This document shows positions 2,343 to 20,370 of a DNA stretch of 20,940 bases, piece after piece. Positions within the stretch are counted from its first letter, which is position 1; the number at the start of each line of letters is the position of its first letter. The position numbers and the translations under genes were made by a program. The DNA lies in NCBI RefSeq assembly GCF_006345805.1, contig NW_021824027.1:1-20940 (forward strand). Reading direction: 5' to 3'. This DNA comes from Octopus sinensis (taxonomy: Eukaryota). The notes under the pieces are model-generated. The model did not search any database. It saw only the letters and a list, made by a program, of their open reading frames with translations, and was not told the origin of the DNA.

Positions 2343-2444
2343 GTGAGTTTTTGCGAAGGACCTTCAACCGTTTGTTTTGTTGCTTGTTGTTGTTGTTGTT
2401 GTTGTGTTCTTGTTGTTCTTGTTGTTCTTGTAGCTGCTGTTATT

Positions 2445-3512
2445 ATTGTTGTTTAGCCCAAGGTCAGTCCTCATCCAAAGAGACAGACTAGTGATCAAAT
2501 ATGTTCCAGCTGTGACCATCCCATCTTATATTCAGGCATAGTGTATCTAGGACTACATTATCTAATGTATAGTATAGGAGTTAGTATTAGTGGCTATAGC
2601 TGTTGTTGTTGTTGTTGTTTAGCCCCAGGTCAGTCCTGATCCAGACAGACCTATGATCAAAGATGCTCCAGCTGTGACCATCCCATCTTTTATTCAGACT
2701 ACATTATCAAATCTATAGTATAATAGCTTGTATTAGTAGCTTTAGTTGTTGTTGTTGTTGTTTAGCCCCAGGTCAGTCCTGATCCAGACAGACCTATGAT
2801 CAAAGTTCTTCCAGCTCTGACCATCCCATCTTTTATTCAGGCATAGTGTATCTAGGACTACATTATCTAATGTATAGTATAGTAGTTAGTATTAGTGGCT
2901 ATAGTTGTTGTTTAGCCCTAGGTCAGACATAGGATCAAAGACGTTCCAGCTGTGACCATCCCATCATTTATCAAGCATAGTGTATCTGGGACTGCATTAT
3001 TTAATGTATAGTATAGTAGTTAGTATTAGTGGCAATAGTTGTTGTTTAGCCCTAGGTCAGACATAGGATCAAAGACGTTCCAGCTGTGACCATCCCATCA
3101 TTTATCAGGCATAGTGTATCTGGGACTGCATTATCTAATGTATAGTATAGTAGTTAGTATTAGTGGCAATAGTTGTTTAGCCCTAGGTCAGACATAGGAT
3201 CAAAGACGTTCCAGCTGTGACCATCCCATCATTTATCAGGCATAGTGTATCTGGGACTGCATTTTCTAATGTTTAGTATAGTAGTTAGTATTAGTGGCTG
3301 TAGTTATTGTTTAGCCCCAGGTCAGTCCTGATCCAGTTAGACCTATGATCAAAGATGTTCCGGCTGTGACCATCCCATCTTTTATTCAGGCATAGTGTAT
3401 CTAGGACCACAGTATCTTAATGTATAAATAGTAGTTAATATTACTGGCTATAACTGTTATTGTTGTTTAACCCCTGGTCCATCCTGATCCAAACAGACCT
3501 ATGATAAAAGAC
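2445..3512 (+). repeat. Tandem array of ~130-165-bp satellite (7 full units + partial)
   Basis: Unit starts GTTTAGCCC at 2451, 2617, 2760, 2910, 3044, 3175, 3309, 3465. Confidence 0.95.
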
Positions 3513-4371: not shown

Positions 4372-4578
4372 ATGTGAAATAGAAAGATGAATAATCTTGT
4401 AGTAGATTAATCAAAAGTTTAACCGATACCTTGGTAGCAAAAATCACAGCAGTAAACAGCACGGTTGGAGGTACGACCATATGGTGTTGCAACCGTGCGT
4501 TGGTGCGGATAATTGAAATAAAATATTATTGGTGAATTGAAGAAATGGAGCTGAACGAAGATTGAACAGAAATCGTTT

Positions 4579-4671
4579 TATTTCATTCTACACGTGTTTC
4601 GAAAGGCACAATTTACCAAAATCCGATTGAATAATGAGACCATATTGTGTCTTTCTCTTCAGGAAGAAATA
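4579..4671 (-). ncRNA. Type I hammerhead ribozyme (left arm of palindrome 4523-4933)
   Basis: Minus strand: UAUUUCUUC-CUGAAGA-[stem II GAAAGACACAAU/AUUGUGCCUUUC, 11/12 paired, 31-nt loop]-GAAA-C-ACGU-GUA-GAAUGAAAUA. Stem I is 9 bp with one bulge. Core intact. Confidence 0.8.
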
Positions 4672-4784
4672 GGAAATCCGTTGGAAAAAACAAAAACAGA
4701 AGTTTTGCCATGGGCTCTTAGGAGCCTAGTTCAATTTGTTTTGCTCCGCCTCTGTTCTGTTTTTGTTTTTTCCAACGGATTTCC

Positions 4785-4877
4785 TATTTCTTCCTGAAGA
4801 GAAAGACACAATATGGTCCCATTATTCAATCGGATTTTGGTAAATTGTGCCTTCCGAAACACGTGTAGAATGAAATA
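4785..4877 (+). ncRNA. Type I hammerhead ribozyme (right arm of palindrome 4523-4933)
   Basis: CUGAAGA 4794-4800; stem II 4801-4812/4844-4855 (10/12 paired); GAAA 4856-4859; palindromic ACACGUGU stem III; GUA cleavage triplet 4865-4867; stem I 4785-4793/4868-4877. Confidence 0.78.
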
Positions 4878-4929
4878 AAACGATTTCTGTTCAATCTTCG
4901 TTCAGCTCCATTTCTTCAATTCACCAATA

Positions 4930-5000
<71 letters not shown>

Positions 5001-5002
5001 AT

Positions 5003-5047
<45 letters not shown>

Positions 5048-5228
5048 TTATATATATATATATATGCATACGGGTTATAAACAGAGAACAAATTTAGAGT
5101 GGATTGTAGGTATTTGACATCTACTTCTAGCGTACAGGCACTGGCATTTCAATGCCCTTAATTATAATTATATTTTTATAAATATATACTTAAAAATATC
5201 TTTTATTCTCTCTCTCTCTGTTTATTTC

Positions 5229-5578
5229 CTTGTGGCCCTTTCTGTTGAAGAGCATAGGCTCAAAACATAAAATACTTTCTCACCTTCCCAAGTGTGTCAA
5301 ACAAATACACCTGCTTGTTCTTTATACACCTCTCTTTGTCTTTTGTTTTTCTGTAAATTTCAACTATATATATATAAATGTGACCGCCTGTGTACCGTTG
5401 GAGATTTTATTTTCCTCCGTCTTCCCTTTCTTGGATCTTTCCTTTTCCTATGTTTCTGACGAAGAGCTCCGCTCGAAACGTTAAACCCCCCTTCTTCCCT
5501 TCCTTCCGGAGCATCCAATAATACTATATTTGTTCCACGTCCTCGCGTTGTTGTGTTTTCTCTTTGTGTTTTCATCCT
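5229..5578 (+). mobile_element. Penelope-like / retrozyme-like terminal repeat carrying minimal hammerhead motifs
   Basis: Contains hammerhead motifs at 5452-5486 (intact) and 5238-5273 (degenerate). Its 3' part recurs on the minus strand at ~9391-9560 and ~10271-10440. Confidence 0.55.
5452..5486 (+). ncRNA. Minimal type I hammerhead ribozyme (dimer-type)
   Basis: GUUU-CUGACGA-A-GAGC(UCC)GCUC-GAA-ACGU-U-AAAC. Stem I is 4 bp, there is an extra A after A9, stem III is palindromic ACGU, and cleavage is predicted after U5482. Confidence 0.7.
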
Positions 5579-5579
5579 T

Positions 5580-5770
5580 GGCGTTAGGAAGGGCATCCTG
5601 GCATTAGGAAGGGCATACTGGCGTTAGGAAGGGCATCCAGCCATAGAAACATTGCCAGATCAGACTGGGCCTGGTGCAGCCTTCTGACTTCCCAGACCCC
5701 AGTTAAACCGTCCAACCCATGCCAGCATGGAAAACGGACGCTAAACAAAGATGATGATGATGATGAAGAT
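5580..5770 (+). mobile_element. 3' fragment of (GAT)n-tailed retroelement family D, with a triplicated 20-bp GGCGTTAGGAAGGGCATCC motif
   Basis: GGCGTTAGGAAGGGCATCCAGC...CCAACCCATGC.AGCATGGAAAACGGACG.TAAAC(GAT)n also found at 7914-8620, 16362-16697, 16871-17008, 17725-18200. Confidence 0.8.
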
Positions 5771-6175
5771 GAGATATATATATATTTCAGTTGGATTGGA
5801 GCTGTAATTTTGTGTGTACACATAGCACGAAATAACATAATTTGTATAGAAGGTTTAGCGAGAGCGAGAGAGTATGTGTGTGTGTGCTAAAAGAAGTTAT
5901 TCTATGGCTTTCTTTCATTTGAAGCAGCAAAATTGTCAACTCAATCATATGATTGTTCGTTAATTTCCGTAAAAATATTTAATTTCTTTATGCTTTGAAG
6001 AGATCAAAAATTGAGAGAGAGGAGAAAGTGAAAAGGTGATATTTGCTTTGAAGTGAGAGCAGAAAGGGAAAGGTGTATGTATGTGTATATGAAATGGACA
6101 CGTGTGTGTGTGTGTGTGCATGAGAGAGAGAGAGTGAGTAAGTAAAGGTGTGTGTTGTCATGTATGTGTAAGTGG

Positions 6176-6223
<48 letters not shown>

Positions 6224-6287
6224 TTATCTTTCATATGCACGTACATGAATACATATGTATATATCATTTTTCCCTCAAATTAATTAA

Positions 6288-6469
6288 TGGAGCATAGGTA
6301 CAAAGCAGTGTTTACGCATGAGCAGAATATAGGTTAGGTGAAATTTGTTTTTGCCATAAGAGAGAGATTTTTTCTCCACGGTAATTACAGTGCATTTGGC
6401 TGTAGCAGTTGAAATATGTGACAAACATATTTCACCTAATTCGAAACACTGCTTTGCGCCTATGGTCCC
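6288..6469. mobile_element. 182-bp MITE flanked by TTAA (Kolobok/T2- or Harbinger-like termini)
   Basis: TTAA 6284-6287 and 6470-6473; 26-bp TIRs TGGAGCATAGGTACAAAGCAGTGTTT vs GGGACCATAGGCGCAAAGCAGTGTTT (4 mismatches); inner inverted TTAGGTGAAAT.TGTTT. Confidence 0.7.
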
Positions 6470-6500
6470 TTAAAATATATAACAGAGAAACAATTCTTAA

Positions 6501-6722
6501 CCCTTTTGTTACCAACCCGGTTGAAACCAGCTCTGGCTCTGTAATACAAGTGTCTTGTTTTCATAAGTTTTGAATTAAAATCTTCCACCAAACCTTAGTC
6601 ACAATTTATGTTCCTAACACTAGCTTAATGATAACTAAGTTATTTTGCTAAATATTTTGTTATATTTAAAATTAATTGAAAGAAACACAGAGCATCTCAA
6701 CAGAAATATGGTAACAAAAGGG
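6501..6722. mobile_element. 222-bp piggyBac-like MITE, copy 1
   Basis: TTAA|CCCTTTTGTTACC ... GGTAACAAAAGGG|TTAA: perfect 13-bp TIR, CCC termini and TTAA target duplication. Confidence 0.85.
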
Positions 6723-6753
6723 TTAAAATATATAATAGAGAAACAATTCTTAA

Positions 6754-6975
6754 CCCTTTTGATACCAGCTTGGCTGAAACCACCTCTGGCTCTGTAGTAC
6801 AAATGTCTTGTTTTCATAAGTTTTGAATTAAAATCTTCCACCAAACCTTAGTCACGATTTATGTTCCTAACACCAGCTTAATGGTAACTAAGTTATTTTA
6901 CTAAATTCTTTGTTATATTTAAAATTAATTGAAAGAAACACACAGCATCTCAAAATAAATACTGTAACGAAAGGG
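6754..6975. mobile_element. 222-bp piggyBac-like MITE, copy 2
   Basis: TTAA|CCCTTTTGATAC ... GTAACGAAAGGG|TTAA; roughly 10% diverged from copy 1 by eye. Confidence 0.85.
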
Positions 6976-7913
6976 TTAAAATATATATATATATACATAC
7001 ATACATAATATATACAAACATATATTTATATATATATATACTGTTGTGTCTGGGGAGAGTCATTTTCTTTTTGTACCTTATAATATAACACACTCACGGG
7101 TAAAATTTCCACTTATTTCTTATTTTTATTTATATATATATATATGTATAAAACATAGGCCTTCACCAGTAATAAATACAGACTGCTCTATGATATGTGT
7201 TTCTGTGTCAGATGTCATTTCTGATCCTTATCTCTGTTGTATCTTAATTGCCTCCTTGGTCCCATCCAGATCAGCATCCCTTTGGTGATAGGGTCATTGG
7301 GATTCTTAACCCAAAGTTAATTTCTTATCACAACTCACATTCGTTCACTCTGTGTGTGTGTGTGTGTGTGTGCGTGTGTGTAAGTGCATATCTGTATATA
7401 CATATGTGTGTTATAATCTGTGTATGTGAGCGCAGGAATGTGGGTTTGTAATAAATGAAATCTGGGTTAGGGATCCCCCCAAGAACTGTCACCAGACAGG
7501 CATCGCCCCCTGGATGGAAGGAAAGGGACTGTTAAGAAATACAACAGAGATAAGGATCACAAATGATGTCTACTTAATGCTTGTAATGTGTGCGGGGGTG
7601 GGGGCTACATAGAGGTGTGTTTATATATGCGTATATTTTTGTATGTGGGTATATACATATATAATATATATATATATATATATAATAAAATAATAATATT
7701 AGGGAGTACAGCTCCAAACTTACAGGGAAAAATTAGATTTAGGATTAAATCAAATTTCACAGTATAAATATATAAAATATGAATTAGAGATAAAACCACT
7801 TTTATATATTATATTAATTATATTTATATTATTTGTTATTTATGTATTGGTTTATGTCTCACTGTTTAGGTTTTATCTCTAATTCATATCATCATCATCA
7901 TCATCATCATCAT

Positions 7914-8620
7914 TAACGTCCGCTTTCATGCTAGCATGGGTTGGACGGTTCAACTGGGGTCTGGCAAGCCGAAGAAGCTGACCAGGCCAGTCGGATCTGG
8001 CAGTGTTTCTACAGCTGGATGCCCTTCCTAACGCCAACCACTCCGAGAGTGTAGTGGGTGATTTTATGTGCCACTGACACAGGTGCCAGACGAGGCTGGC
8101 AGACGGCCACGCTCGGATGGTGTGTTTTTTATGTGCCACCGACACAGGTGCCAGACGAGGCTGGCGAACGGCCACGCTCGGATGGTGTTTTTTATGTGCC
8201 ACCGACACAGGTGCCAGACGAGGCTGGCGAACGGCCACGCTCGGATGGTGTTTTTTATGTGCCACTGACACAGGTGCCAGACGAGGCTGGCAGACGGCCA
8301 CGCTCGGATGGTGTTTTTTATGTGCCACCGACACAGGTGCCAGACGAGGCTGGCGAACGGCCACGCTCGGATGGTGTTTTTATGTGTCACCGACACAGGT
8401 GTCAGACGAGGCTGGCAGACGGCCACGCTCGGATGGTGTTTTTTATGTGCCACCGACACAGGTGCCAGACGAGGCTGGCGAACGGCCACGATCGGATGGT
8501 GTTTGTTACGTGCCCACAGCACGGAGGCCAGTCAATGCGGTACTGGCTACGGCCACGTTCGGATGGTTTTCTTATGTGCCACCGGCACTGGTACCACAAA
8601 GATACAAATTCCATTGATGT
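7914..8620 (-). mobile_element. Family D element with internal 63-bp tandem expansion
   Basis: (ATC)n tail at 7888-7913; 63-bp units start at 8066, 8131, 8194, 8257, 8320, 8382, 8445. Confidence 0.85.
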
Positions 8621-8664
8621 TCATCTATTTTGATTTGGTTTGATATATATATATATATATATAT

Positions 8665-8760
8665 AGTGGCTGTGTGGTAAGTAGCTTGCTTCCCAACCAC
8701 ATATTTCCGGGTTCAGTCCCACTGCATGGCACCTTGGGCAAGTGTCTTCTACTATAGCCT
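8665..8760 (+). mobile_element. 5' fragment of tRNA-derived SINE family A
   Basis: TGGCTGTGTGG A box and GGTTCAGTCCC B box; truncated after CTATAGCCT. Confidence 0.85.
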
Positions 8761-9016
8761 GTTTTTTGAAAAACAAGGGGGGATTTGTGGCGGTGTTCAG
8801 TGAACAAATTAAACACACTACCCAGCAGTGGCTAAAACGCAAACCAATCAAGTTTATGTATAAATTTTCTTTTTAATGTTTGTTGCCTTTTACACAATAT
8901 TAAAACAAGGGATAAAAATTTTCTGAAGCAGAACCCCCGACCCTTAATTTTATCTATGAACCACCACTGACATTGTTGTTATATATTTATATTTTTGTCT
9001 TAATGTCTCCCCGCAG

Positions 9017-9116
9017 GTCACCATGGATGGCGACGAGAACCCGGTTCTTAAAACCCTCAGGGAAAACGTCATAGGGTCAGACCTGATAGTCAATGGCCCC
9101 TATGGGCCAGTCAAAG
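9017..9116 (+). CDS. Exon of PLP-dependent class-V aminotransferase / cysteine-desulfurase-like gene (VT-MDGDENPVLKTLRENVIGSDLIVNGPYGPVK)
   Basis: Acceptor ccgcag|9017; ATG 9023 in good Kozak context (gtcaccATGG); donor G|GTAAG at 9117 (phase 1). The LRENVIG..GPYG motif is typical of this family's N-terminus. Confidence 0.85.
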
Positions 9117-9203
9117 GTAAGCGCAACTTTCTAAAGGCCTCTGTGTTTCACTCACCCTTATTGTATAGAGTCATAATCATCACCACAAGTACCCCCTCCA
9201 TGT

Positions 9204-9360
9204 GTGGCTGTGTGGTAAGAAGCCTGCTTCCCAACCACATGGTTCCAGGTTCAACCCCATTGCATGGCACCTTGGGCAACAGTCTTCTGCTGTAACCTTG
9301 AGCCAACCACAGCTTTATGAGTGGATTTTGTAGACGTAAACTGAAAGAAGCCTGTTGTAT
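9204..9360 (+). mobile_element. Diverged 5' half of SINE family A
   Basis: Homologous to 9652-9820. Confidence 0.8.
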
Positions 9361-9380
9361 ATACGTTTATATATGTATAT

Positions 9381-9606
9381 ATATATATAGTTAATCCAAA
9401 CAAGAAAACACAGAAAAAAACACAGCAACGGGAGGACGTGGAACAATTAAAGTATTATTGGACGCTCAGGAAAGAAGGGAAGAAGGAGGGTTTAACGTTT
9501 CGAGCGGAGCTCTTTGTCGGAAACAAAGGAGAAGGAAAGATCCCGAGAAGGGAAGACAGAAGAAAAAAATTTTTTGCTGGTGGTGCTCAAGAGATCACAT
9601 GTTGAA

Positions 9607-9651
<45 letters not shown>

Positions 9652-10485
9652 GGCGTAGGAGTGGCTGTGTGGAAAGTAGCTTGCTTACCAACCACATGGT
9701 TCCGGGTTCAGTCCCACTGCGTGGCATCTTGGGCAAGTGTCTTCTGCTATAGCCCCAGGCCGACCAATGCCTTGTGAGTGGATTTGGTAGACGGAAACTG
9801 AAAGAAGCCCATCGTATATATGTATATAAATATATATATATAGGCGTAGGAGTGGCTGTGTGGAAAGTAGCTTGCTTACCAACCACATGGTTCCGGGTTC
9901 AGTCCCACTGCGTGGCATCTTGGGCAAGTGTCTTCTGCTATAGCCCCAGGCCGACCAATGCCTTGTGAGTGGATTTGGTAGACGGAAACTGAAAGAAGTC
10001 CGTCATTTATATGTATATATATATATGCATGTGTGTGTTTGTTTATCTGAGTTTGTACCCCTAGCATTGCTTGACAACCGATGCTGGTGTGTTTACGTCC
10101 CCATCACTTAGCGGTTCAGCAAAAGAGACCGATAGAATAAATACTGGGCTTACAAAGAATAAGTCCTGGGGTCGATTTGCTCGACTAAAAGGTGGTGCTC
10201 CAGCATGGCCACAATCAAATGACTGAAACAAGTAAAAGAATAAAAGAGTAAAGAGTATATATATATATAGTTAATCCAAACAAGAAAACACAGAAAAAAC
10301 ACAGCAACGGGAGGACGTGGAACAATTAAAGTATTATTGGACGCTCAGGAAAGAAGGGAAGAAGGAGGGTTTAACGTTTCGAGCGGAGCTCTTTGTCGGA
10401 AACAAAGGAGAAGGAAAGATCCCGAGAAGGGAAGACAGAAGAAAAAAATTTTTTGCTGGTGGTGCTCAAGAGATCACATGTTGAA

Positions 10486-10530
<45 letters not shown>

Positions 10531-11139
10531 GGCGTAGGAGTGGCTGTGTGGAAAGTAGCTTGCTTACCAACCACATGGTTCCGGGTTCAGTCCCACTGCG
10601 TGGCATCTTGGGCAAGTGTCTTCTGCTATAGCCCCAGGCCGACCAATGCCTTGTGAGTGGATTTGGTAGACGGAAACTGAAAGAAGCCCATCGTATATAT
10701 GTATATAAATATATATATATAGGCGTAGGAGTGGCTGTGTGGAAAGTAGCTTGCTTACCAACCACATGGTTCCGGGTTCAGTCCCACTGCGTGGCATCTT
10801 GGGCAAGTGTCTTCTGCTATAGCCCCAGGCCGACCAATGCCTTGTGAGTGGATTTGGTAGACGGAAACTGAAAGAAGTCCGTCATTTATATGTATATATA
10901 TATATGCATGTGTGTGTTTGTTTATCTGAGTTTGTACCCCTAGCATTGCTTGACAACCGATGCTGGTGTGTTTACGTCCCCATCACTTAGCGGTTCAGCA
11001 AAAGAGACCGATAGAATAAATACTGGGCTTACAAAGAATAAGTCCTGGGGTCGATTTGCTCGACTAAAAGGTGTGGTGTCCAGCATGGCCACAATCAAAT
11101 GACTGAAACAATAAAAGAATAAAAAGAGAATAAAGAGTA
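9381..11139. repeat. Near-identical ~880-bp tandem duplication (9381-10260 / 10261-11139), each unit = dead-hammerhead repeat + SINE A head + full SINE A
   Basis: Offset 879-880; the ORF track repeats with offset 879; differences are limited to a 1-nt A-run change and the last ~70 bp. Confidence 0.95.
9490..9524 (-). pseudogene. Core-mutated copy of the 5452-family hammerhead (identical copy at 10369-10403)
   Basis: Minus strand GUUU-CCGACAA-A-GAGCUCCGCUC-GAAACGUU-AAAC: U4C and G8A substitutions in the core. Confidence 0.7.
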
Positions 11140-11154
11140 AAGAGTTATATATAT

Positions 11155-11197
<43 letters not shown>

Positions 11198-11207
11198 GTA
11201 TGTATAT

Positions 11208-11415
11208 TTGTCTGTCTCTGTATTTGACCCGCGACCACCACCACCAATGTTGGTGAGTTTACGTTTCTGTGACTTAGTAGTATGGCAAAAGACACTGATC
11301 AAATAAGTACTAGGCTTACTAAGAATAAGTCCTGGAGGAGTAGGGGGCAGCACTTGTTCAACTAAAAGCGGTGCTCCAGCATGACCGCATTCAAATGACT
11401 GAAACAAGTAAAAGA

Positions 11416-11416
<1 letters not shown>
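11208..11416 (+). mobile_element. Diverged 3' half of SINE family A
   Basis: ...GGTGCTCCAGCATGACCGCATTCAAATGACTGAAACAAGTAAAAG tail. Confidence 0.8.
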
Positions 11417-11446
<30 letters not shown>

Positions 11447-11482
11447 ATACCAAGAAAAAAGCAGCAAGAATGGATTAGTAGT

Positions 11483-11570
11483 TTTAGTACAATTGTTTCA
11501 TACTTAGAGCAATTTTATTTGAAGCTGCAAATATTGCAGCAAATATAATGTCCAGTATTCATCAGCTAAA
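11483..11570 (-). ncRNA. Type I hammerhead ribozyme (left arm of inverted repeat 11450-11896)
   Basis: Minus strand: UUUAG-CUGAUGA-AUACU...long stem II ending in GCUGCAA/UUGCAGC hairpin...AGUAU-GAAA-C-AAUU-GUA-CUAAA. Core intact; stem I 5 bp. Confidence 0.8.
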
Positions 11571-11775
11571 TCAAATATATATGTTTTCCAGACATCCTAG
11601 AGAGTTTGACTATCCTCATGAAGTTATTAGGAGTGAGTTCTATGAAATTTAAAGTCAAATTATAAGCAGTCTTAAAATGCTTTCTAATGATGCACAGTTT
11701 TATAAAAAGTTTTTAAAAAGATTGTTAACTTCCCAGAGAAGGTGAATCCATCTATAAAAATGCATTTTTATGTGA

Positions 11776-11864
11776 TTTAGCTGATGAAAACTGGACATTT
11801 GTATTTGCTGCAATATTTGCAGCTTCAAATAAAATTGTTCTTAGTATGAAACAATTGTACTAAA
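11776..11864 (+). ncRNA. Type I hammerhead ribozyme (right arm of inverted repeat 11450-11896)
   Basis: CUGAUGA 11781-11787; GAAA 11848-11851; palindromic ACAAUUGU; GUA 11857-11859; stem I UUUAG/CUAAA. A.A mismatch at the second pair of stem II. Confidence 0.75.
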
Positions 11865-12019
11865 CGACTAATCCATTCTTGTTGCTTTTTTCTTGGTTAT
11901 AATCACCCCACATAATTTTATGGTTAATACCATAAAGTATTCTGGTGCATCTAAGTTAAGTACCGCATTCATGTGAATTCATTGGAATTCACTTGAATCT
12001 TAATTGTTTTTGCTGAAAT

Positions 12020-12093
<74 letters not shown>

Positions 12094-12125
12094 ATGTATA
12101 TATATATATATAATATATATATATA

Positions 12126-12178
<53 letters not shown>

Positions 12179-12206
12179 ATATATATATATGTGTGTGTGT
12201 GGTGTG

Positions 12207-12260
<54 letters not shown>

Positions 12261-12269
12261 ATATATATA

Positions 12270-12304
<35 letters not shown>

Positions 12305-12374
12305 ATACACACACACACACACACAAGCATATATATATAATCTAAGTAGGCTTCATCTCTTATGCTCTATGCTT

Positions 12375-12889
12375 TACATTAGATAATGTAGTCCTAGATA
12401 CACTATGCCTGAATAAAAGATGGGATGGTCACAGCTGGAACATCTCTGATCATAGGTCTGTCTGGATCAGGACTGACCTGGGGCTAAACAACAACAACAG
12501 CTATAGCCACTAATACTAACTACTATACTATACATTAGATAATGTAGTCCTAGATACACTATGCCTGAATAAAAGTTGGGATGGTCACAGCTGGAACATC
12601 TTTGATCATAGGTCTGTCTGGATCAGGACTGACCTAGGGCTAAACAACAACTATAGCCACTAATACTAACTACTATACTATACATTAGATAATGTAGTCC
12701 TAGATACACTATGCCTGAATAAAAGTTGGGATGGTCACAGATGGAACGTCTTTGATCATGGATCTGGACTGTCCTGGGGCTAAACAGCAATTATAGTCAC
12801 TAATACTAACTACTGTACTATACATTAGATATTGTAGTCCTAGATACACTATGCCTGAATAAAAGGTGGGATGGTCACAACTGGAACGT
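12375..12889 (-). repeat. Second array of the 130-165-bp satellite, opposite orientation (~4 units)
   Basis: Reverse complement of 2445-3512 units (GGGATGGTCACAGCTGGAAC...GGGCTAAACAAC). Confidence 0.95.
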
Positions 12890-13162
12890 GAGAATAATCT
12901 ACCAGTTGTAGCCACTAGTACTAGCTACTACAGATTTGTAGTGTTTTTCCCAAGAACTTCTCATAGAGAAAGCAAGAGAGTGAAGAAGAGAGAGGGAGAG
13001 AGAGAGAGAAGCTAGATTCTAGGAAAGAATCCAGCATCATTTCATCACAAATGTTGTTTTCCGTTTGTGTGAAGGATTGGCTCTGCAACATGAGCAGACA
13101 CGATATGCACTTAACAAGGGCTTAAAAACTCAAGACACAAGTCAAGTGTATCTTTGACAAAG

Positions 13163-13354
13163 TTAAGGCGGCAAGCTGGCCAAAATGCTCAACCGGTTAA
13201 GGTCAAACAACTGACAAGCAAATCTGTGGTATTGAGCAGAATATTTGCTGTAAAACCCATCTTTTATACCAACACAAAACAATGTATATGATAACACTTC
13301 CAATCAGTTAAGATCAGAAGCCATCAGAGCCACTGCCTGGTACTGCGTCAGGGC

Positions 13355-13356
<2 letters not shown>
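13163..13356 (+). mobile_element. SINE-like element with family-B-type head and (ATT)n tail
   Basis: AAGGCGGCAAGCTGGC head; ends CTGGTACTGCGTCAGGGCATT followed by (ATT)n 13357-13415. Confidence 0.55.
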
Positions 13357-13415
<59 letters not shown>

Positions 13416-13418
<3 letters not shown>

Positions 13419-13700
13419 TAGTTTTATTTTTATATCGTGCTTTCACTTCACTACCGAGCGCAGCTCTGTGTGCCTTGGGTATGTGCTGTGATTTGTTGTG
13501 ATGCTCTGATGGTTATTGTATGGAAAGTGTTCTGCGTAGGATGTGTGCAGTACCTAGTAGTGCAATTTTCTGTATGTTATATGTGTTTGTAAGTCCTGGT
13601 GTTTTTGTTATGTATTTGTCTGAATATTTTTTTATCATGCCTAATGCGCCTACTATGATAGGAATTGTTTCTGTTTTCAGAATTGGTTCTATTTTTTCTA
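13416..13700 (-). mobile_element. 5'-truncated non-LTR retrotransposon 3' end with restriction-like endonuclease C-terminus (R4/Dong-like)
   Basis: Peptide ..TIPIIVGALGMIKK..IQKIALLGTAHILRRTLSIQ* (stop 13513-13515) matches the P.V.GALG / Q...LLGTA.ILR signature; ~97-bp 3' UTR; (TAA)n on both sides. Confidence 0.75.
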
Positions 13701-13868
13701 TTATTATTATTATTATTATTATTGTTATTTCCATTTATCATTAAAAGGTATTATTGAATGCTGTTTAGTTTCAACTTTTGTCTTGTACTTGAGATAATCA
13801 TAAATATGTTTAAAGGGTTTAAGGGAATAGTGCGAGCAAGTGAAACAGCATGGTGAATAGAAATTCCA

Positions 13869-14280
13869 CAGGAGTGGCTGTGTGGTAAGTAGCTTGCTAA
13901 CCAACCACATGGTTCCGGGTTCAGTCCCACTGCCTGGCATCTTGGTCAAGTGTCTTCTGCTATAGCCCTGGGCCGACCAATGCCTTGTGAGTGGATTTGG
14001 TACACGGAAACTGAAAGAAGCCTGTCGTATATATGTATATATATATATGTATATGTATGTGTATGTGTTTGTGTGTCTGTGTTTGTCTCCCTAGCATTGC
14101 TTGACAACCAATGCTGGTGTGTTTACGTCCCCGTCACTTAGCAGTTCGGCAAAAGAGACTGATAGAATAAGTACTAGGCTTACAAAGAATAAGTCCCGGA
14201 GTTGATTTGACTCGACTAAAAGGCGGTGCTCCAGCATGGCCGCAGTCAAATGACTGAAACAAGTAAAAGAGTAAAAGAGA
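13869..14280 (+). mobile_element. Near full-length SINE family A
   Basis: A/B boxes, central (TA)/(TG) tract, AAGTAAAAGAG tail. Confidence 0.9.
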
Positions 14281-14405
14281 GAGGTCTCAAGGTATATGCA
14301 ATGGGCATTCCTGTGCAATAAGGAGACAAAAGCAGCCTCACACCCTTGGGGTCAGCAGAGGTCAAATGTGTTTACATAGAAATTCCACAGGTCTGAAGGA
14401 ATCTG

Positions 14406-14809
14406 TTTCTTTATTACCCACAAGGGGCTTAAACACAGAGAGGACAAACAAGGACAGACAAAGGGATTAAGTCGATTACATCGACGCCAGTGCGTAACTG
14501 GTACTTAATTAATCGACCCCGAAAGGATGAAAAGCAAAGTCGACCTCGGCGGAATTTGAACTCAGAACGTAGCGGCAGACGAAATACCTATTTCTTTATT
14601 ACCCACAAGGGGCTTAAACACAGAGGGGACAAACAAGGACAGACAAATGGATTAAGTCGCTTACATTGACACCAGTGCATAACTGGTACTTAATTTATCG
14701 ACCCCGAAAGGATGAAAGGCAAAGTCGACCTCGGCGGAATTTGAACTCAGAACGTATTGGCAGACGAAATACCACTAAGCATTTCGCCCGGTGTGCTAAT
14801 GGTTCTGCC
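14406..14809 (-). mobile_element. tRNA-derived SINE family B with its ~185-bp 3' body duplicated in tandem
   Basis: Minus-strand head TGGCAGAACCATTAGCACACCGG and B box GAGTTCAAATTCC; units ~14406-14590 and ~14591-14772. Confidence 0.8.
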
Positions 14810-15047
14810 AAAAGCAGCCTCACGCCCCTGGGGTCAGTAGAGGTCAAATGTGTTTACTACAACTAGTGATCAATGAGAGCACTAACCTTTGCCAGGAAAT
14901 GAACCAATTCACCTTGTTCTATTTTTAATTACTGATAGACAGAAACAATTATTTATAAGGAGAGAAAGAGGATTGTTTCAATTCATGGAACAGGGATTAA
15001 GTGATAAAGCCAGAGCAGTAAGAAGAATTCATTGGTTCACTGAAGTA

Positions 15048-15630
15048 GGCGCAGGAGTGGCTGTGTAGTAAGTAGCTTACTACCAACCACATGGTTCTGG
15101 GTTCAGTCCCACTGCGTGGCGGCACCTTGGGCAAGTGTCTTCTACTATAGCCTTGGGCTGAACAGAGCCTTGTGAGTGGATTTCGTAGATGGAAACTGAA
15201 AGAAGCCCATCGTGTGTGTATATATAGGCATAGGAGTGGCTGTGTGGTAAGTAACTTGCTTACTAACCACATGGTTCCAGGTTCAGTCCCACTGCATGGC
15301 ACCTTGGGCAAGTGTCTTCTGCTATAGCCTCGGGCCGACCAAAGCCTTGTGAGTGGATTTGGTAGACGGAAACTGAAAGAAGCCCGTCGTATATATGTAT
15401 ATATATATCTGTATGTGTGTGTATATGTTTGTGTGTCTGTGTTTGTCCCCCCAACATCGCTTGACAACCAATGCTGGTGTGTTTACATCCCCGAAACTTA
15501 GCAGTTCGGCAAAAGAGACCAATTGAATAAGTACTAGGCTTACAAAGAATAAGTCCTGGGGTCGATTTGCTTGACTAAAGGCGGTGCTCCAGCATGGCCG
15601 CAGTCAAATGACTGAAACAAATAAAAGAGA
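15048..15630 (+). mobile_element. SINE A head (15048-15215) followed by full SINE A (15227-15630)
   Basis: Same head-plus-full layout as 9652-10255. Confidence 0.9.
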
Positions 15631-15699
15631 ATATATATATGTGTGTGTGTCCCTCCATCATCACTTGACATCCAATGTCGGTGTGTTTACATCCCCATA

Positions 15700-15865
15700 A
15701 CATGATGTTGGTGATGATGAGGACGACGATGAAGATGACAACATTGATGGTTGTTGTGGTGGCAACGGTGGTGACTGTTGATTGTGGTGGTGGTGGTGGT
15801 GGTGGTGGTGGTGATGCCCATTATGATAATGATTATGATGATTATGGTGACGATAATAACGATAA
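15700..15865. repeat. (GAT)/(GGT)-rich trinucleotide tract just upstream of the 31-nt exon
   Basis: Direct reading. Confidence 0.9.
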
Positions 15866-15885
15866 ATATTTTTCCTCTTTTTCAG

Positions 15886-15916
15886 TTATCTACTGTGATT
15901 TTACAGCATCAGGAAG
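15886..15916 (+). CDS. 31-nt exon of the same gene (V-IYCDFTASG-R)
   Basis: Polypyrimidine tract + ttcag|15886; donor AG|GTGAG at 15917. Phase 1 to phase 2 fits both neighbouring exons. YxDxTASGR is the conserved family motif. Confidence 0.9.
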
Positions 15917-15979
15917 GTGAGTTATTCATTTGCATACTTTATTGATTCCCTGAACTCAATTAACATTCAACAGGCTCTG

Positions 15980-16052
15980 GTTGCAGTGGAACTGAACCTG
16001 GACCATGTGGTTGAGAAGCCAGCTTCTTACCACACAGCCACACCTGTACCTA
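15980..16052 (-). mobile_element. SINE A head fragment
   Basis: Reverse complement of GGTGTGGCTGTGTGGTAAG...GGTTCAGTTCC. Confidence 0.75.
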
Positions 16053-16060
16053 TGTGTGTG

Positions 16061-16101
<41 letters not shown>

Positions 16102-16103
16102 CA

Positions 16104-16155
<52 letters not shown>

Positions 16156-16361
16156 CATATTTATATATACATATATATATATAAATATGTAGAAAAATAC
16201 AAACTGGGACAAGAACGTAAAACATTAGAAGATGATACAAAAAACACGGACGGGACATTCGAAGCCTTCAATCTTCAGTCAAGATCCGGATCATCCTAGC
16301 AATTTCGGCTTGATTAATCTTGAAATACATATATATATATATACATGTATATATATATAGC

Positions 16362-16694
16362 CAGGATCCCATGTCTGGTGGTACGTAAAAAGCACTATCC
16401 GACTCGTGGCCGATGCCAGCACCGCCTCGACTGGCTTCCGTGCCGGTGGCACATAAAATACACCAATCCGACCGTGGCCGTTGCCAGCCTCGCCTGGCAC
16501 CTGTGCAGGTGGCACGTAAAAAGCACCCACTACACTCACGGAGTGGTTGGCGTTAGGAAGGGCATCCAGCCGTAGAAACACTGCCAGATCAGACTGGAGC
16601 CTGGTGCAGCCTTCTGGCTTCCCAGATCCCCGGTCGAACCGTCCAACCCATGCTAGCAAGAAAAATGGACGTTAAACGATGATGATGATGATGA

Positions 16695-16728
<34 letters not shown>

Positions 16729-16778
16729 GTCCAACCCATGCTAGCATGGAAAACGGACACTAAACGACGATGATGATG

Positions 16779-16827
<49 letters not shown>

Positions 16828-17005
16828 GGAGAGTATTGTAGTTTGCTTGAAGCATTGTGTATTGTTTGTAAAGGGCATCCAGCTGTAGAAACTCTGCCAG
16901 ATTAAGATTGGAGTCTGGTGCAGCCATCTGGTTCGCCAGTCCTCAGTCAAAATCGTCCAACCCATGCTAGCATGGAAAGCAGACGTTAGATGATGATGAT
17001 GATGA

Positions 17006-17008
<3 letters not shown>
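16362..17008 (+). mobile_element. Cluster of family D copies (16362-16697, 16728-16778, 16871-17008), each ending in (GAT)n
   Basis: Repeated CCAACCCATGCTAGCA..GAAA..GGAC.TTA.A(GAT)n ends. Confidence 0.8.
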
Positions 17009-17065
<57 letters not shown>

Positions 17066-17169
17066 CTGTGTGTGTGTAAAGAATAAGAAGTTTTGAATGG
17101 TACAACAATGCACTATAATACCAACAATGGGCTGTGTATACCTGTTGTAATTTAGTCATCCATAATCTG

Positions 17170-17206
17170 ATATGATATTTCGGAATAGAATTCCTTCTTC
17201 AGATAT
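17170..17206 (-). ncRNA. Minimal type I hammerhead ribozyme (dimer-type)
   Basis: Minus strand: AUAU-CUGAAGA-A-GGAAU(UCU)AUUCC-GAA-AUAU-C-AUAU. Perfect 5-bp stem II, palindromic AUAU stem III, AUC triplet, 4-bp stem I. Confidence 0.7.
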
Positions 17207-17414
17207 TCTTAGATGGAGTCGTTGCTATAATCGGTTTTCCAACGTCTTTTCAATTTTATATTTTTTCCGGAAGTATTTCAGCGGTGGTCTCACGAAGCTC
17301 CTTCCAGAATTCCTCATAAGAAGTGTGTGAGGTCGGCCATGTCTCAACCTCGTGGGTGCTGGTACATCCGTAGCGCTGCTTCTAAGTTATGTATCATACA
17401 TGCATATGTATGTA

Positions 17415-17720
17415 TATTACCGTGGCCGACCAGGCTGTCAGATGTTGCTACACATCGCTGGTCACAATGCGCTTCGCATTGTTTTTAGCCTTCAAATGAC
17501 GCCACCCCGCTGGCTAAGCGAGTAGGCCAACAGAAGAAAGTGTGAGAGAAAGTTGTGGCGAAAGAGTACAGCAGGGATCGCCACCACCCCCTGCTGGAGC
17601 CTCATGGGGCTTTAGGTGTTTTCGCTCAATAAACACTCACAATGCCCAGTCTGGGAATCGAAACCACAATCCTCCGACCATGAGTCCACTGCCCTAACCA
17701 CTAGGCCATTGCGCCTCCAC
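17415..17720 (-). mobile_element. tRNA-derived SINE family C, tail variant 2
   Basis: Minus-strand TGGCCTAGTGG A box and GGTTTCGATTCCC B box. Confidence 0.85.
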
Positions 17721-17724
17721 ATGT

Positions 17725-18200
17725 ATCATCATCATCATCATTTAACGTCTGTTTTCCATGCTAGCATGGGTTGGACGGTCCAACTGGGGTCTGGGAAGCC
17801 AGAAGGCTGCACCAGGCCCAGTCTGATCTAGCAGAGTTTCTACAGCTGGATGCCTTTCCTAACGCCAACCACTCCGTGAGTGTAGTGGGTGCTTTTTACG
17901 TGCCACCGGCACGGGGGCGAGGCGACGCTGGCAACGGCCACAATCGGATGGTGCTTTTTACGTGCCACCAGCACGGGGGCCAGGCGAGGCTGGCAAATGG
18001 CCACGATCGGATGGTGCTTTTTACGTGCCACCGACACGGGGGCCAGGCGAGGCTGGCAAACGGCCACGGACGGATGGTGCTTTTTACGTACCACCAACAC
18101 GGAGGCCAGGCGGGGCGGCGCTGGCAACGGTCACGATCGGATGGTTCGCTTACTTGTCACTGGCACTGGTATCACAGCTGCAATTTCCATTGATGTTGAT
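17725..18200 (-). mobile_element. Family D element with ~4 internal ~62-bp units
   Basis: Homologous to 7914-8620. Confidence 0.85.
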
Positions 18201-18402: not shown

Positions 18403-18752
18403 TTGTTGCTGTTGTTGTTTAGCCCCAGGTCAGTCCTTGATCCAGACAGACCCATGATCAAAGATGTTCCAGCTGTGACCATCCCATCTTTCACTCAGGC
18501 ATAGTGTATCTAGGACTACATTATCTAATGTATAGTATAGTAGTTAGTATTAGTGGCTATAGTTGTTGTTGTTGTTTAGCCCCAGGTCAGTCCTGATCCA
18601 GACAGACCCATGATCAAATATGTTCCAGCTGTGACCATCCCTTCGTTTATTCAGGCATAGTGCATCTAGGACTATATCATCCAATGTATAGTATAGTAGT
18701 TAGTATTAGTGCCTCTATTGTTGTTTAGCCCCAGGTCAGTCCTGATCGAGAC
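18403..18752 (+). repeat. Third array of the 130-165-bp satellite (2 units + partial), starting ~30 nt after the exon donor
   Basis: GTTTAGCCCCAGGTCAGTCC unit starts at ~18417, ~18575, ~18722. Confidence 0.95.
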
Positions 18753-18987: not shown

Positions 18988-19202
18988 CTCTTTTACTCTT
19001 TTACTTGTTTCAGTCATTTGACTGCGGCCATGCTGGAGCACCACCTTTAGTCGGGCAAATCAAGCCCGGGACTTATTCTTTGTAAGCCCAGTACTTATTC
19101 TATCGGTCTCTTTTGCCGAGCCACTAAGTGACGGGGACGTAAACACACCAGCATCGGTTGTCAAGCAATGCTAGGGGGACAAACACAGACACACAAACAT
19201 AT

Positions 19203-19250
<48 letters not shown>

Positions 19251-20079: not shown

Positions 20080-20209
20080 ACAAATTATCAAGAACTGTGT
20101 GAATGCCACGGACGATGATGTGGTCATCTTCTGTGGAGCTGGCTGCACTGGGGCCATTCACAAGCTGATTGGGGGTCTGGACATACAGGAGGAACAGAAG
20201 GAGAAGACG
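20080..20209 (+). CDS. 130-nt exon of the same gene (R-QIIKNCVNATDDDVVIFCGAGCTGAIHKLIGGLDIQEEQKEKT); gene continues beyond the window
   Basis: T-tract + accag|20080; donor ACG|GTAAGT at 20210; phase 2 to phase 0. The VIFxGxGxTGA motif is the PLP-contacting segment of class-V aminotransferases. The PLP lysine is not in the window. Confidence 0.92.
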
Positions 20210-20370
20210 GTAAGTAGATATATACGTTGTTCTATGCTTTGTTTTGGACTGCGGCCATGCTGGGGCACCGTCTTGCAGGGTTTTGGGTCGAAACTAATTG
20301 ACTGCTGTACTTCAGTTTTGGAGGCTGGGTATTTATTCTCTCGGCCTCTTTTTATGCCGGACCACTCACC

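What the first reader, a model, noticed from the sequence alone, without database searches (positions are those of the whole stretch)
4523..17206. Four unrelated hammerhead-ribozyme families in one gene, all with palindromic stem III, and every gene-sense copy handicapped
Seen: six motifs with an intact CUGANGA...GAAA...NUH core and complementary stems (4579-4671 -, 4785-4877 +, 5452-5486 +, 11483-11570 -, 11776-11864 +, 17170-17206 -). They share no flanking sequence across families, yet each has a self-complementary stem III (ACACGUGU, ACAAUUGU, ACGU, AUAU). Established: Penelope-like elements and animal retrozymes carry type I hammerheads whose palindromic stem III permits dimeric cleavage. 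Seen: both + strand (pre-mRNA-sense) copies in the inverted cassettes have a mismatch at the second base pair of stem II (A4802.C4854; A11789.A11846), while their minus-strand twins pair there. The third + copy needs a dimer partner and its neighbour is degenerate. Inference: selection may be muting self-cleavage of the host pre-mRNA. With n=2-3 this could be chance.
Basis: partly seen in the sequence, partly recalled or inferred. Interest (0 to 1): 0.85.

Follow-up and report, generated by a model that had tools for sequence, protein, structure and literature searches.

The report
Retrotransposon hammerhead ribozyme relics
The six hammerhead-ribozyme motifs are real, but they look like ordinary leftovers of Penelope-like retrotransposons scattered in and around an animal gene, and nothing in this window shows that the gene has silenced the copies on its own strand.

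Summary
Observation confirmed. All six motifs sit at the stated coordinates, with an intact CUGANGA...GAAA...UH core, type I topology, a self-complementary helix III and the predicted cleavage sites. A strict descriptor finds 4 hits against 0.001 expected per shuffled window. The four families share no sequence beyond chance.

They match a known kind: the type I and minimal hammerheads of Penelope-like elements (PLEs). The two short motifs have the unpaired base between A9 and G10.1, a G10.1-C11.1 pair and a palindromic 15.x-16.x. The two "inverted cassettes" are head-to-head inverted copies with their 3' ends outward. Most insertions end near (TA)n tracts, as described for PLE insertions. No PLE reading frame is in the window, and Rfam's hammerhead threshold is not reached (best 14.8 bits against 34).

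The "sense copies are handicapped" idea is not supported:
- The one fully intact sense copy (5452-5486) has antisense relatives with dead cores (CCGACAA).
- The + twin of the second cassette has the more stable stem II overall.
- Lacking a dimer partner applies equally to the minus-strand copies.
- Each cassette folds into a 125-180 bp hairpin that buries the ribozyme whichever strand is transcribed.
- Two of the four families lie upstream of the ATG exon, so they may not be intronic.

The parts
4523..4933 (.). Family 1 cassette. Two head-to-head inverted copies (arms 4523-4701 and 4755-4933, 2 differences in 179 nt) with a 53-nt centre. The 3' ends point outward and the right end abuts (AT)70 at 4930-5065.
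   Evidence: Folds as a hairpin of about 180 bp, -310 kcal/mol.
4579..4671 (-). F1- hammerhead. Helix I is 3 bp, a bulged U, then 6 bp. Core CUGAAGA, G10.1-C11.1, 55-nt helix II, GAAA, helix III ACACGUGU (a 2-bp stem with ACGU loop, or an 8-bp intermolecular helix). H17 is A and the predicted cut is after 4589.
   Evidence: Rfam RF00163 14.8 bits, E 0.46, below gathering 34.
4785..4877 (+). F1+ twin. It differs from F1- at two stem II positions: A4802.C4854 instead of A-U, and C-G instead of U.G further up the stem. Predicted cut after 4867.
5238..5273 (+). Decayed family-3-like motif in 'unit A', about 213 nt upstream of the intact one. It reads CUGUUGA-A-GAGC/GCUC-AAAA-ACAU. The core changes are at former CpG sites.
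   Evidence: alignment, sequence.
5381..5592 (+). Family 3 unit B, about 210 nt. Its 5' end lies next to a short (TA)n run.
5452..5486 (+). F3+ minimal hammerhead. Helix I GUUU/AAAC, core CUGACGA, an unpaired A, helix II GAGC-UCC-GCUC with G10.1-C11.1, GAAA, helix III ACGU. H17 is U and the predicted cut is after 5482. Core and stems are fully intact.
9404..9606 (-). Family 3 copy in antisense orientation, 87-88% identical to unit B. (TA)n lies at its 5' end and 15 nt from its 3' end. The core is dead: CCGACAA at 9514-9520.
10284..10485 (-). Second antisense family 3 copy with the same dead core (10393-10399). It was produced by the 879-bp tandem duplication and is not an independent insertion.
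   Evidence: (D18).
11449..11897 (.). Family 2 cassette. Head-to-head inverted copies (arms about 11449-11577 and 11763-11897, 92-93% identical) around a centre of about 185 nt. TATAAT is found on both flanks, and (AT)n lies 10 nt from the left end.
   Evidence: Hairpin of -216 kcal/mol.
11483..11570 (-). F2- hammerhead. Helix I UUUAG/CUAAA, core CUGAUGA, A10.1-U11.1, 59-nt helix II, GAAA, helix III ACAAUUGU. H17 is A and the predicted cut is after 11488.
   Evidence: No Rfam hammerhead hit.
11776..11864 (+). F2+ twin. It has an A11789.A11846 mismatch at 10.2/11.2 and four more stem II differences. Stem II as a whole is more stable than in F2-. Predicted cut after 11859.
17170..17206 (-). F4- minimal hammerhead, a single copy. 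Helix I AUAU/AUAU, core CUGAAGA, an unpaired A, helix II GGAAU-UCU-AUUCC, GAAA, helix III AUAU. H17 is C and the predicted cut is after 17174. About 95 nt downstream the unit runs into (CA)n(TA)n at 17010-17078.
9017..9116 (+). Host-gene exon. AG acceptor, ATG at 9023, 31 codons plus 1 nt, GT donor.
   Evidence: ORF.
15886..15916 (+). Host-gene micro-exon of 31 nt (phase 1 to 2), encoding VIYCDFTASG.
20080..20209 (+). Host-gene exon of 130 nt (phase 2 to 0), encoding RQIIKNCVNATDDDVVIFCGAGCTGAIHKLIGGLDIQEEQKEKT.

Best explanation
The motifs are the 3'-proximal hammerhead ribozymes of at least four different, heavily 5'-truncated insertions of Penelope-like retroelements, or of short non-coding elements mobilised by them. 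They landed in and upstream of a + strand gene, mostly at or next to microsatellites.

Each unit keeps 40-110 nt between the predicted cleavage site and its 3' end. Families 1 and 2 were integrated as head-to-head inverted pairs, the 'inverted 5'-truncated copy' arrangement known for PLEs. That puts one ribozyme on each strand.

In the active parent elements the ribozymes presumably process long or tandem element transcripts. Helix III would form either as a weak 2-bp stem with a tetraloop (families 1 and 2) or between two copies as a dimer (families 3 and 4).

Here they are most likely inert passengers. No copy has an intact same-strand partner. The inverted pairs collapse into long hairpins in any read-through transcript. 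The differences between copies look like neutral drift and CpG decay.

Shown: the motifs, their statistics, the architecture and the decay pattern. Inferred: PLE parentage, the mechanism of integration and the lack of activity.
For: Significance. 4 strict hits against 0.001 expected, and 6 of the 11 CTGANGA heptamers carry the full layout.

- an unpaired base between A9 and 10.1 in F3 and F4;
- G10.1-C11.1 in F1, F3 and F4;
- palindromic 15.2-16.2 or loop 3 in all four;
- short helix I of 4-5 bp;
- 'dual min-HHRs 100-700 bp apart on opposite strands'. Here the two core starts are 132 and 216 bp apart.

PLE insertion habits (PMC8557442): an inverted 5'-truncated copy next to the 5' end, the hammerhead near the 3' end, and a bias for (TA)n. 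In this window both cassettes are head-to-head with 3' ends outward. Four of five independent insertions have an end within 15 nt of a (TA)>=4 run, while only 14% of window positions lie within 12 nt of such a run.

No selective signature. Core-dead copies differ at CpG sites. Differences between the arms both weaken and strengthen stem II.

Hairpin dominance is shown.

Low intrinsic activity of such motifs, even as dimers, is reported in PMC4209133.
Against: - No PLE reverse transcriptase or GIY-YIG reading frame is present in the window.
- No other genomic copies could be fetched, so family consensus, covariation and linkage to PLE ORFs are untested.
- Rfam's hammerhead model is not reached at gathering score.
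- F2 has A10.1-U11.1 rather than G-C. F1 and F2 have unusually long (55-60 nt) helix II and lack the extra base.
- F2 is flanked by a TATAAT direct repeat and F1 by possible TA. That is also what a DNA-transposon MITE would show.
- MFE folding does not favour the hammerhead fold for F2, F3 or F4.
Confidence: 0.75

Rival explanations
1. First reader's hypothesis. Selection has disabled the hammerheads that lie in the sense orientation of the host pre-mRNA, by stem II mismatches or loss of the dimer partner, while antisense copies stay intact.
For: Both + twins carry a mismatch at the same base pair, 10.2/11.2, where the - twins pair. By the strict descriptor 3 of 4 independent minus-strand copies pass and 1 of 4 plus-strand copies pass. 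A 2026 preprint reports that retrozymes are depleted from introns in Xenopus, so some selection against genic copies is plausible (10.64898/2026.07.22.740005).
Against: - The sense copy F3+ is fully intact while its antisense relatives have dead cores.
- F2+ stem II is more stable overall than F2-. In F1 the second difference improves the + twin.
- Lack of a partner applies to all copies alike.
- With n = 2 twin pairs the chance that both + twins are the 'worse' copy is 0.25. My hand-calculated Fisher p for the census is about 0.5.
- The hairpin architecture already buries the ribozyme on either strand.
- F1 and F3 are not shown to be inside the transcription unit.
- Natural active retrozyme hammerheads with a mismatch at the base of helix II exist (axolotl HHR_Amex2, PMC7229834).
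Confidence: 0.06
2. Families 1 and 2 are foldback or MITE-type DNA transposons, or a distinct palindromic non-autonomous element class, that carry a hammerhead in each terminal inverted repeat. On this view they are not products of PLE integration.
For: They have long near-perfect inverted arms, 179 nt at 99% and about 130 nt at 92%. F2 is flanked by TATAAT on both sides, and F1 has possible TA flanks. No PLE ORF is nearby.
Against: To my knowledge no DNA transposon is known to carry hammerheads. Two unrelated elements both carry a hammerhead with the PLE or metazoan helix III signature. Head-to-head inverted 5'-truncated copies and microsatellite targets are already described for PLEs. Opposite-strand pairs of minimal hammerheads are already reported in Schistosoma.
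Confidence: 0.12
3. Some or all of the motifs are chance matches to a loose pattern. F4 in particular is suspect, being a single AT-rich copy with helix I AUAU and helix III AUAU.
For: There is no Rfam hit for F2, F3 or F4 even at E<=10 on short pieces. F4 has no second copy in the window. In family 3 a CpG-decay route from CCGACGA to CUGACGA cannot be excluded from three copies.
Against: The expected number of chance hits is 0.001-0.02 per window against 4 independent hits. Allowing two core mismatches adds no unrelated hit. F3 and F4 both carry the unpaired base 3' of A9 and a G10.1-C11.1 pair, features that were not required by the search.
Confidence: 0.05

Closest known systems
Minimal hammerhead ribozymes of Penelope-like elements (Cervera & de la Pena 2014, PMC4209133; dimer cleavage shown by Lunse, Weinberg & Breaker, RNA Biol 2017, cited from PMC6765202)
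   Same: Type I topology, CUGANGA/GAAA/UH core, and helix III absent or reduced to a palindrome. F3 and F4 have the unpaired base between A9 and 10.1. F1, F3 and F4 have G10.1-C11.1. Helix I is short. Many unrelated sequence families occur in one genome, mostly as solo copies. Pairs on opposite strands a few hundred bp apart are known.
   Different: No PLE ORF or pLTR context is seen in the window. F1 and F2 have a 55-60 nt helix II instead of 6-8 bp and lack the extra base. F2 has A10.1-U11.1. Activity is untested.
PLE insertion architecture (Craig, Yushenova, Rodriguez & Arkhipova 2021, PMC8557442)
   Same: An inverted 5'-truncated copy adjoining the 5' end gives inverted repeats. The hammerhead lies near the 3' end. 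Insertions favour microsatellites, including (TA)n, which makes target-site duplications hard to read.
   Different: Here both copies of each pair are extremely truncated (130-320 nt), so no coding part is left. The (TA)n preference was reported mainly for Naiads, which lack canonical hammerheads.
Canonical metazoan type I hammerheads of non-LTR retrozymes (Cervera & de la Pena 2020, PMC7229834)
   Same: In F1 and F2 helix III can be read as a 2-bp stem closed by a palindromic tetraloop (ACGU, AAUU), as described for invertebrate type I hammerheads. The units are short, non-coding and AT-rich.
   Different: Retrozymes are head-to-tail tandem repeats with a hammerhead in each unit. Here the copies are inverted or solo. 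The only tandem pair (5190-5592) has one dead unit that aligns only loosely with the intact one. The loop 1-loop 2 tertiary contacts are not recognisable.
Intronic hammerheads of amniotes (RECK, CTCL and DTNB introns; review PMC6155905)
   Same: Type I hammerheads lying inside introns of protein-coding genes.
   Different: Those are single, deeply conserved copies that are thought to have been domesticated. The motifs here are parts of repeats, are decaying, and show no evidence of conservation.

Membership tests
Hammerhead ribozyme, type I (Rfam RF00163) | Conserved core C3 U4 G5 A6 N7 G8 A9 ... G12 A13 A14 ... A15.1-U16.1, H17 | tested here: met
   All six motifs meet it. Three further family-3 copies fail it.
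Hammerhead ribozyme, type I (Rfam RF00163) | Three helices in type I order, with helix I open and helices II and III closed | tested here: met
   Helices I and II are present in all six, with a 10.2/11.2 mismatch in the two + twins. Helix III exists only as a 2-bp stem with tetraloop (F1, F2) or as a 4-nt palindrome that needs a second molecule (F3, F4).
Hammerhead ribozyme, type I (Rfam RF00163) | Score at or above Rfam's gathering threshold (34 bits) | tested here: not met
   No hit at gathering threshold. F1- scores 14.8 bits, E 0.46, on a 121-nt piece. F2-, F3+ and F4- give no hit at E<=10.
Hammerhead ribozyme, type I (Rfam RF00163) | Site-specific self-cleavage | not testable with these tools
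   This needs in vitro transcription of monomer and dimer constructs.
PLE minimal hammerhead (Cervera & de la Pena 2014) | [quoted passage not shown] | tested here: inconclusive
   Present (an A) in F3 and F4. Absent in F1 and F2.
PLE minimal hammerhead (Cervera & de la Pena 2014) | Conserved G10.1-C11.1 pair | tested here: inconclusive
   Present in F1, F3 and F4. F2 has A-U.
PLE minimal hammerhead (Cervera & de la Pena 2014) | Palindromic 15.2-16.2, and palindromic loop 3 when present | tested here: met
   ACACGUGU, ACAAUUGU, ACGU and AUAU.
PLE minimal hammerhead (Cervera & de la Pena 2014) | Location in the terminal repeats of an element that encodes RT and a GIY-YIG endonuclease | tested here: not met
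   No such reading frame appears in the window's six frames on inspection of the translations; no profile search was run on them. The paper itself says that most genomic motifs are solo copies outside full elements, so this does not exclude PLE origin.
PLE minimal hammerhead (Cervera & de la Pena 2014) | Multi-copy consensus families with covariation in the helices | not testable with these tools
Metagenome scans, the ORF look-up and the protein search all came back empty.
Non-LTR retrozyme (Cervera & de la Pena 2020) | Head-to-tail tandem repeats of about 170-400 bp, each with a complete type I hammerhead | tested here: not met
   F1 and F2 are inverted and F4 is solo. The F3 tandem (units A and B, about 213 nt apart) has one dead, highly diverged unit.
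MITE / foldback DNA transposon | Terminal inverted repeats flanked by a fixed-length target-site duplication | tested here: inconclusive
   Inverted arms are present. TATAAT lies on both flanks of F2. The flanks of F1 are ambiguous within AT-rich sequence.

The most novel reading that the evidence does not exclude
Families 1 and 2 could represent a distinct class of short palindromic, hammerhead-bearing non-autonomous elements. Their read-through transcripts would form 125-180 bp perfect hairpins. These could feed small-RNA or RNA-editing pathways instead of, or in addition to, ribozyme processing. The shared 10.2/11.2 mismatch in the gene-sense arms could then be a first hint of orientation-dependent selection on intronic ribozymes.
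Probability: 0.08. Interest if true: 0.55.

Novelty: new member of a known kind. Interest (0 to 1): 0.22.

Why it matters
The result is mainly useful for annotation. It shows that a strict structural descriptor picks out PLE-type hammerheads that Rfam's curated thresholds miss, and that four unrelated ribozyme-bearing families can accumulate within 13 kb of one locus. The broader question of whether host genes select against self-cleaving RNAs in the sense orientation of their introns is still open. The one recent study found here tested only intron against intergenic position, not orientation. This window gives no evidence either way. It does point to the confounders such a test must handle: CpG decay, hairpin formation by inverted pairs, and uncertain transcript boundaries.

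Tried and rejected
1. Rfam. Searches at gathering threshold and at E<=10 on the whole window gave no hammerhead. The many miRNA 'hits' are generic matches to TA/CA microsatellites and to the F1 hairpin, all far below their thresholds. Piecewise searches gave one sub-threshold RF00163 hit.

2. Fetching other copies for covariation, with no result:
- exact-pattern scans of the metagenome collection with F3 and F1 sequences, 0 hits;
- look-up of an ORF spanning F3, not on record.

3. Identifying the host gene. A protein search with the spliced 85-aa peptide found no candidate. Pfam found nothing. PDB gave only noise. The resemblance I recalled to class V aminotransferase-like proteins is therefore untested.

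4. A possible LINE or PLE coding remnant upstream of F4 (17259-17381, minus strand). The exhaustive HMMER search returned two repetitive proteins with multi-stretch artefact matches and nonsense Pfam hits, so the idea is dropped.

5. Chance as an explanation is rejected by the shuffles.

6. tRNA-like heads of the SINEs: ARAGORN finds none.

7. A shared 3' terminal motif between F2 and F3 (UUUUCUUGG-like) is not above shuffled controls.

8. MFE folding of single motifs and homodimers. Only F1- adopts the expected double-hammerhead dimer. The others prefer alternative folds. This is not decisive for hammerheads.

Full report
WHAT IS THERE

The window is AT-rich and packed with repeats: microsatellites, SINE-like units and minisatellites. 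Only 11 CTGANGA heptamers occur on the two strands. Six of them are followed by a complete type I hammerhead layout. So do the six predicted cleavage sites: after 4867, 5482 and 11859 on +, and after 4589, 11488 and 17174 on -.

IS IT MORE THAN CHANCE?

I wrote a descriptor requiring helix I of at least 3 bp, CUGANGA, 0-1 extra base, helix II of at least 4 bp, GAAA, a self-complementary A...U stretch and a non-G residue. It returns four hits, one per family. The two + twins fail only because of the 10.2/11.2 mismatch.

In 1000 dinucleotide-preserving shuffles the mean is 0.001 hits per window. Without the palindrome requirement it is 0.021, and no shuffle gives more than one hit. Allowing two core mismatches adds only decayed members of family 3. 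The four families give no local alignment score above shuffled controls and no blastn cross-hit.

RFAM

There is no hammerhead match at gathering score or at E<=10 over the window. On short pieces F1- aligns end to end with Hammerhead_1 (RF00163) at 14.8 bits, against a gathering score of 34, with E 0.46. F2-, F3+ and F4- give nothing. The curated membership criterion is therefore not met. That is expected for motifs with a 50-nt insertion in helix II or with no helix III hairpin.

ANATOMY OF THE ELEMENTS

Family 1 (4523-4933) and family 2 (11449-11897) are inverted pairs.
- Family 1 has arms of 179 nt with 2 differences, separated by a 53-nt centre.
- Family 2 has arms of about 130 nt at 92-93% identity, separated by about 185 nt.
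- In both, the ribozyme of the left arm is on the - strand and that of the right arm is on the + strand. The two copies are therefore head to head, with their 3' ends at the outer borders.

Family 3 is a unit of about 210 nt.
- The copy at 5381-5592 (+) holds the intact motif.
- An 87-88% identical copy lies at 9404-9606 (-). It is repeated at 10284-10485 by a perfect 879-bp tandem duplication.
- A strongly diverged tandem neighbour lies at about 5190-5380 (+).

Family 4 is a single copy at 17170-17206 (-).

In every unit the predicted cleavage site lies 40-110 nt from the 3' end. Four of the five independent insertions have an end within 15 nt of a (TA)>=4 run, although only 14% of window positions lie within 12 nt of one. 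The fifth runs into (CA)n(TA)n. My rough binomial estimate for this association is about 0.02.

COMPARISON WITH WHAT IS KNOWN

Cervera and de la Pena (PMC4209133) described minimal type I hammerheads in the terminal repeats of Penelope-like elements and scattered through metazoan genomes. The features they reported are:
- many unrelated consensus families per genome, mostly solo copies;
- a short helix I;
- an unpaired nucleotide between A9 and 10.1;
- a conserved G10.1-C11.1 pair;
- a palindromic 15.2-16.2 or loop 3;
- pairs of motifs 100-700 bp apart on opposite strands;
- very low activity in vitro, even as dimers.

F3 and F4 show the unpaired A, the G10.1-C11.1 pair and the 4-nt palindrome.

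F1 and F2 have an 8-nt palindrome. It can equally be read as the 2-bp stem with palindromic tetraloop typical of invertebrate type I hammerheads (PMC4209133; PMC7229834). They are unusual in having a 55-60 nt helix II, and F2 in having A10.1-U11.1.

Craig et al. (PMC8557442) describe PLE insertions as heavily 5'-truncated. Often an inverted 5'-truncated copy abuts the 5' end, the hammerhead lies near the 3' end, and insertions are biased toward microsatellites. The two cassettes fit that picture.

The best reading is therefore relics of PLE-type retroelements or of their non-autonomous derivatives. No RT or GIY-YIG frame is present in the window, and I could not fetch other genomic copies. PLE parentage remains an inference.

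THE HOST GENE

Three + strand exons have canonical AG/GT borders and compatible phases: 9017-9116 (ATG at 9023), 15886-15916 and 20080-20209. F2 and F4 are therefore intronic.

F1 and F3 lie 3.5-4.5 kb upstream of the ATG exon. That exon has an acceptor site, so an upstream non-coding exon must exist. Its position is unknown, so these two families may be intronic or intergenic. The gene family could not be established.

THE 'HANDICAPPED SENSE COPIES' IDEA

The narrow observation is true. Both + twins have a mismatch at 10.2/11.2 and both - twins pair there. The inference does not hold up.

1. In family 3 the sense copy is the intact one. The antisense copies have CCGACAA, with U4C and G8A changes.
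2. The other differences between arms run the opposite way. In F1 the second difference turns a U.G pair into C-G in the + twin, and stem II energies are -11.7 against -10.9 kcal/mol. In F2 the + twin gains two G.U pairs, and its stem II is more stable, -15.0 against -13.5. An active axolotl retrozyme family naturally has a U.U mismatch at the base of helix II.
3. The third 'handicap', lack of a dimer partner, applies to every copy on both strands.
4. The count of independent copies passing the strict descriptor is 1 of 4 on + and 3 of 4 on -. My hand-calculated Fisher p is about 0.5. For the twin pairs alone, the chance that both + twins are the weaker copy is 0.25.
5. A continuous transcript of either strand folds each cassette into a hairpin of about 180 bp (-310 to -316 kcal/mol) or about 125 bp (-202 to -216). 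The single motifs fold at about -15 to -20. Because the copies are head to head, the ribozyme-sense arm is always the downstream one. It emerges when its complement is already present. The architecture alone should suppress cleavage.
6. The core changes in dead family-3 copies are CG to CA or TG changes, the signature of neutral CpG decay. One caveat follows from the same logic: with only three copies, an ancestral CCGACGA for family 3 cannot be strictly excluded.

VERDICT

The motifs are real and far beyond chance. In kind they are known: PLE-type or metazoan type I hammerheads in truncated, partly inverted retroelement copies. The selection hypothesis is not supported by this window. It would need a genome-wide, age-matched and CpG-aware comparison. 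The 2026 preprint that reports intron depletion of retrozymes did not examine orientation.

Noticed in passing
window 9415-10293 and 10294-11172: A perfect 879-bp tandem duplication (100% identity over the 300 nt reported). It contains one family-3 copy and several SINE-like units. It is either a very recent duplication or an assembly artefact.
   Followed up: partly
window 8665-8760, 9203-9298, 9660-9755, 9851-9946, 10539-10634, 10730-10825, 13873-13968, 15235-15330 (+); inverted relatives near 19039-19237: At least eight copies of a SINE-like repeat, 85-93% identical, with a GGTTC(A/G)NNCC-type box. ARAGORN calls no tRNA. From memory it resembles cephalopod SINEs, but the organism was not identified.
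   Followed up: partly
window 8063-8601 and 17892-18179: Arrays of a 63-nt minisatellite (7 and 3 units) embedded in another repeat family. The flanking GGCGTTAGGAAGGGCATCC motif recurs at 5599-5640, 8017-8037, 16547-16567 and 17848-17868.
   Followed up: no
window 20335-20924: A tandem array with a 36-nt period, at least 10 overlapping copies, lying 126 nt downstream of the third exon's donor site and running to the window's end.
   Followed up: no
window 2443-3452, 12313-12889, 18406-18717: Tandem arrays of a 131-156 nt unit present in both orientations (inverted pairs I1, I4, I7). No hammerhead-like core was found in them by the degenerate scan.
   Followed up: partly
window 6470-6975: Two tandem copies of a 253-nt unit, 92% identical, with no hammerhead core.
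   Followed up: no
window 4633-4823: The family-1 hairpin gives sub-threshold Rfam matches to several plant MIR hairpin families (58-60 bits against thresholds of 83-184). These are generic long-hairpin matches, but such a hairpin in a transcript could be a substrate for Dicer or ADAR.
   Followed up: partly
window 9017-9116, 15886-15916, 20080-20209: Three + strand exons of a gene that could not be named. The spliced 85-aa peptide has no match in the protein collection, Pfam or PDB. The 31-nt middle exon is a micro-exon.
   Followed up: partly
window 17420-17715 (-) and 421-771: A second SINE-like family with a tRNA-like head (GGCCTAGTGGTTAGGGC...GGTTTCGATTCCC) lies directly upstream of the family-4 unit on the minus strand.
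   Followed up: no
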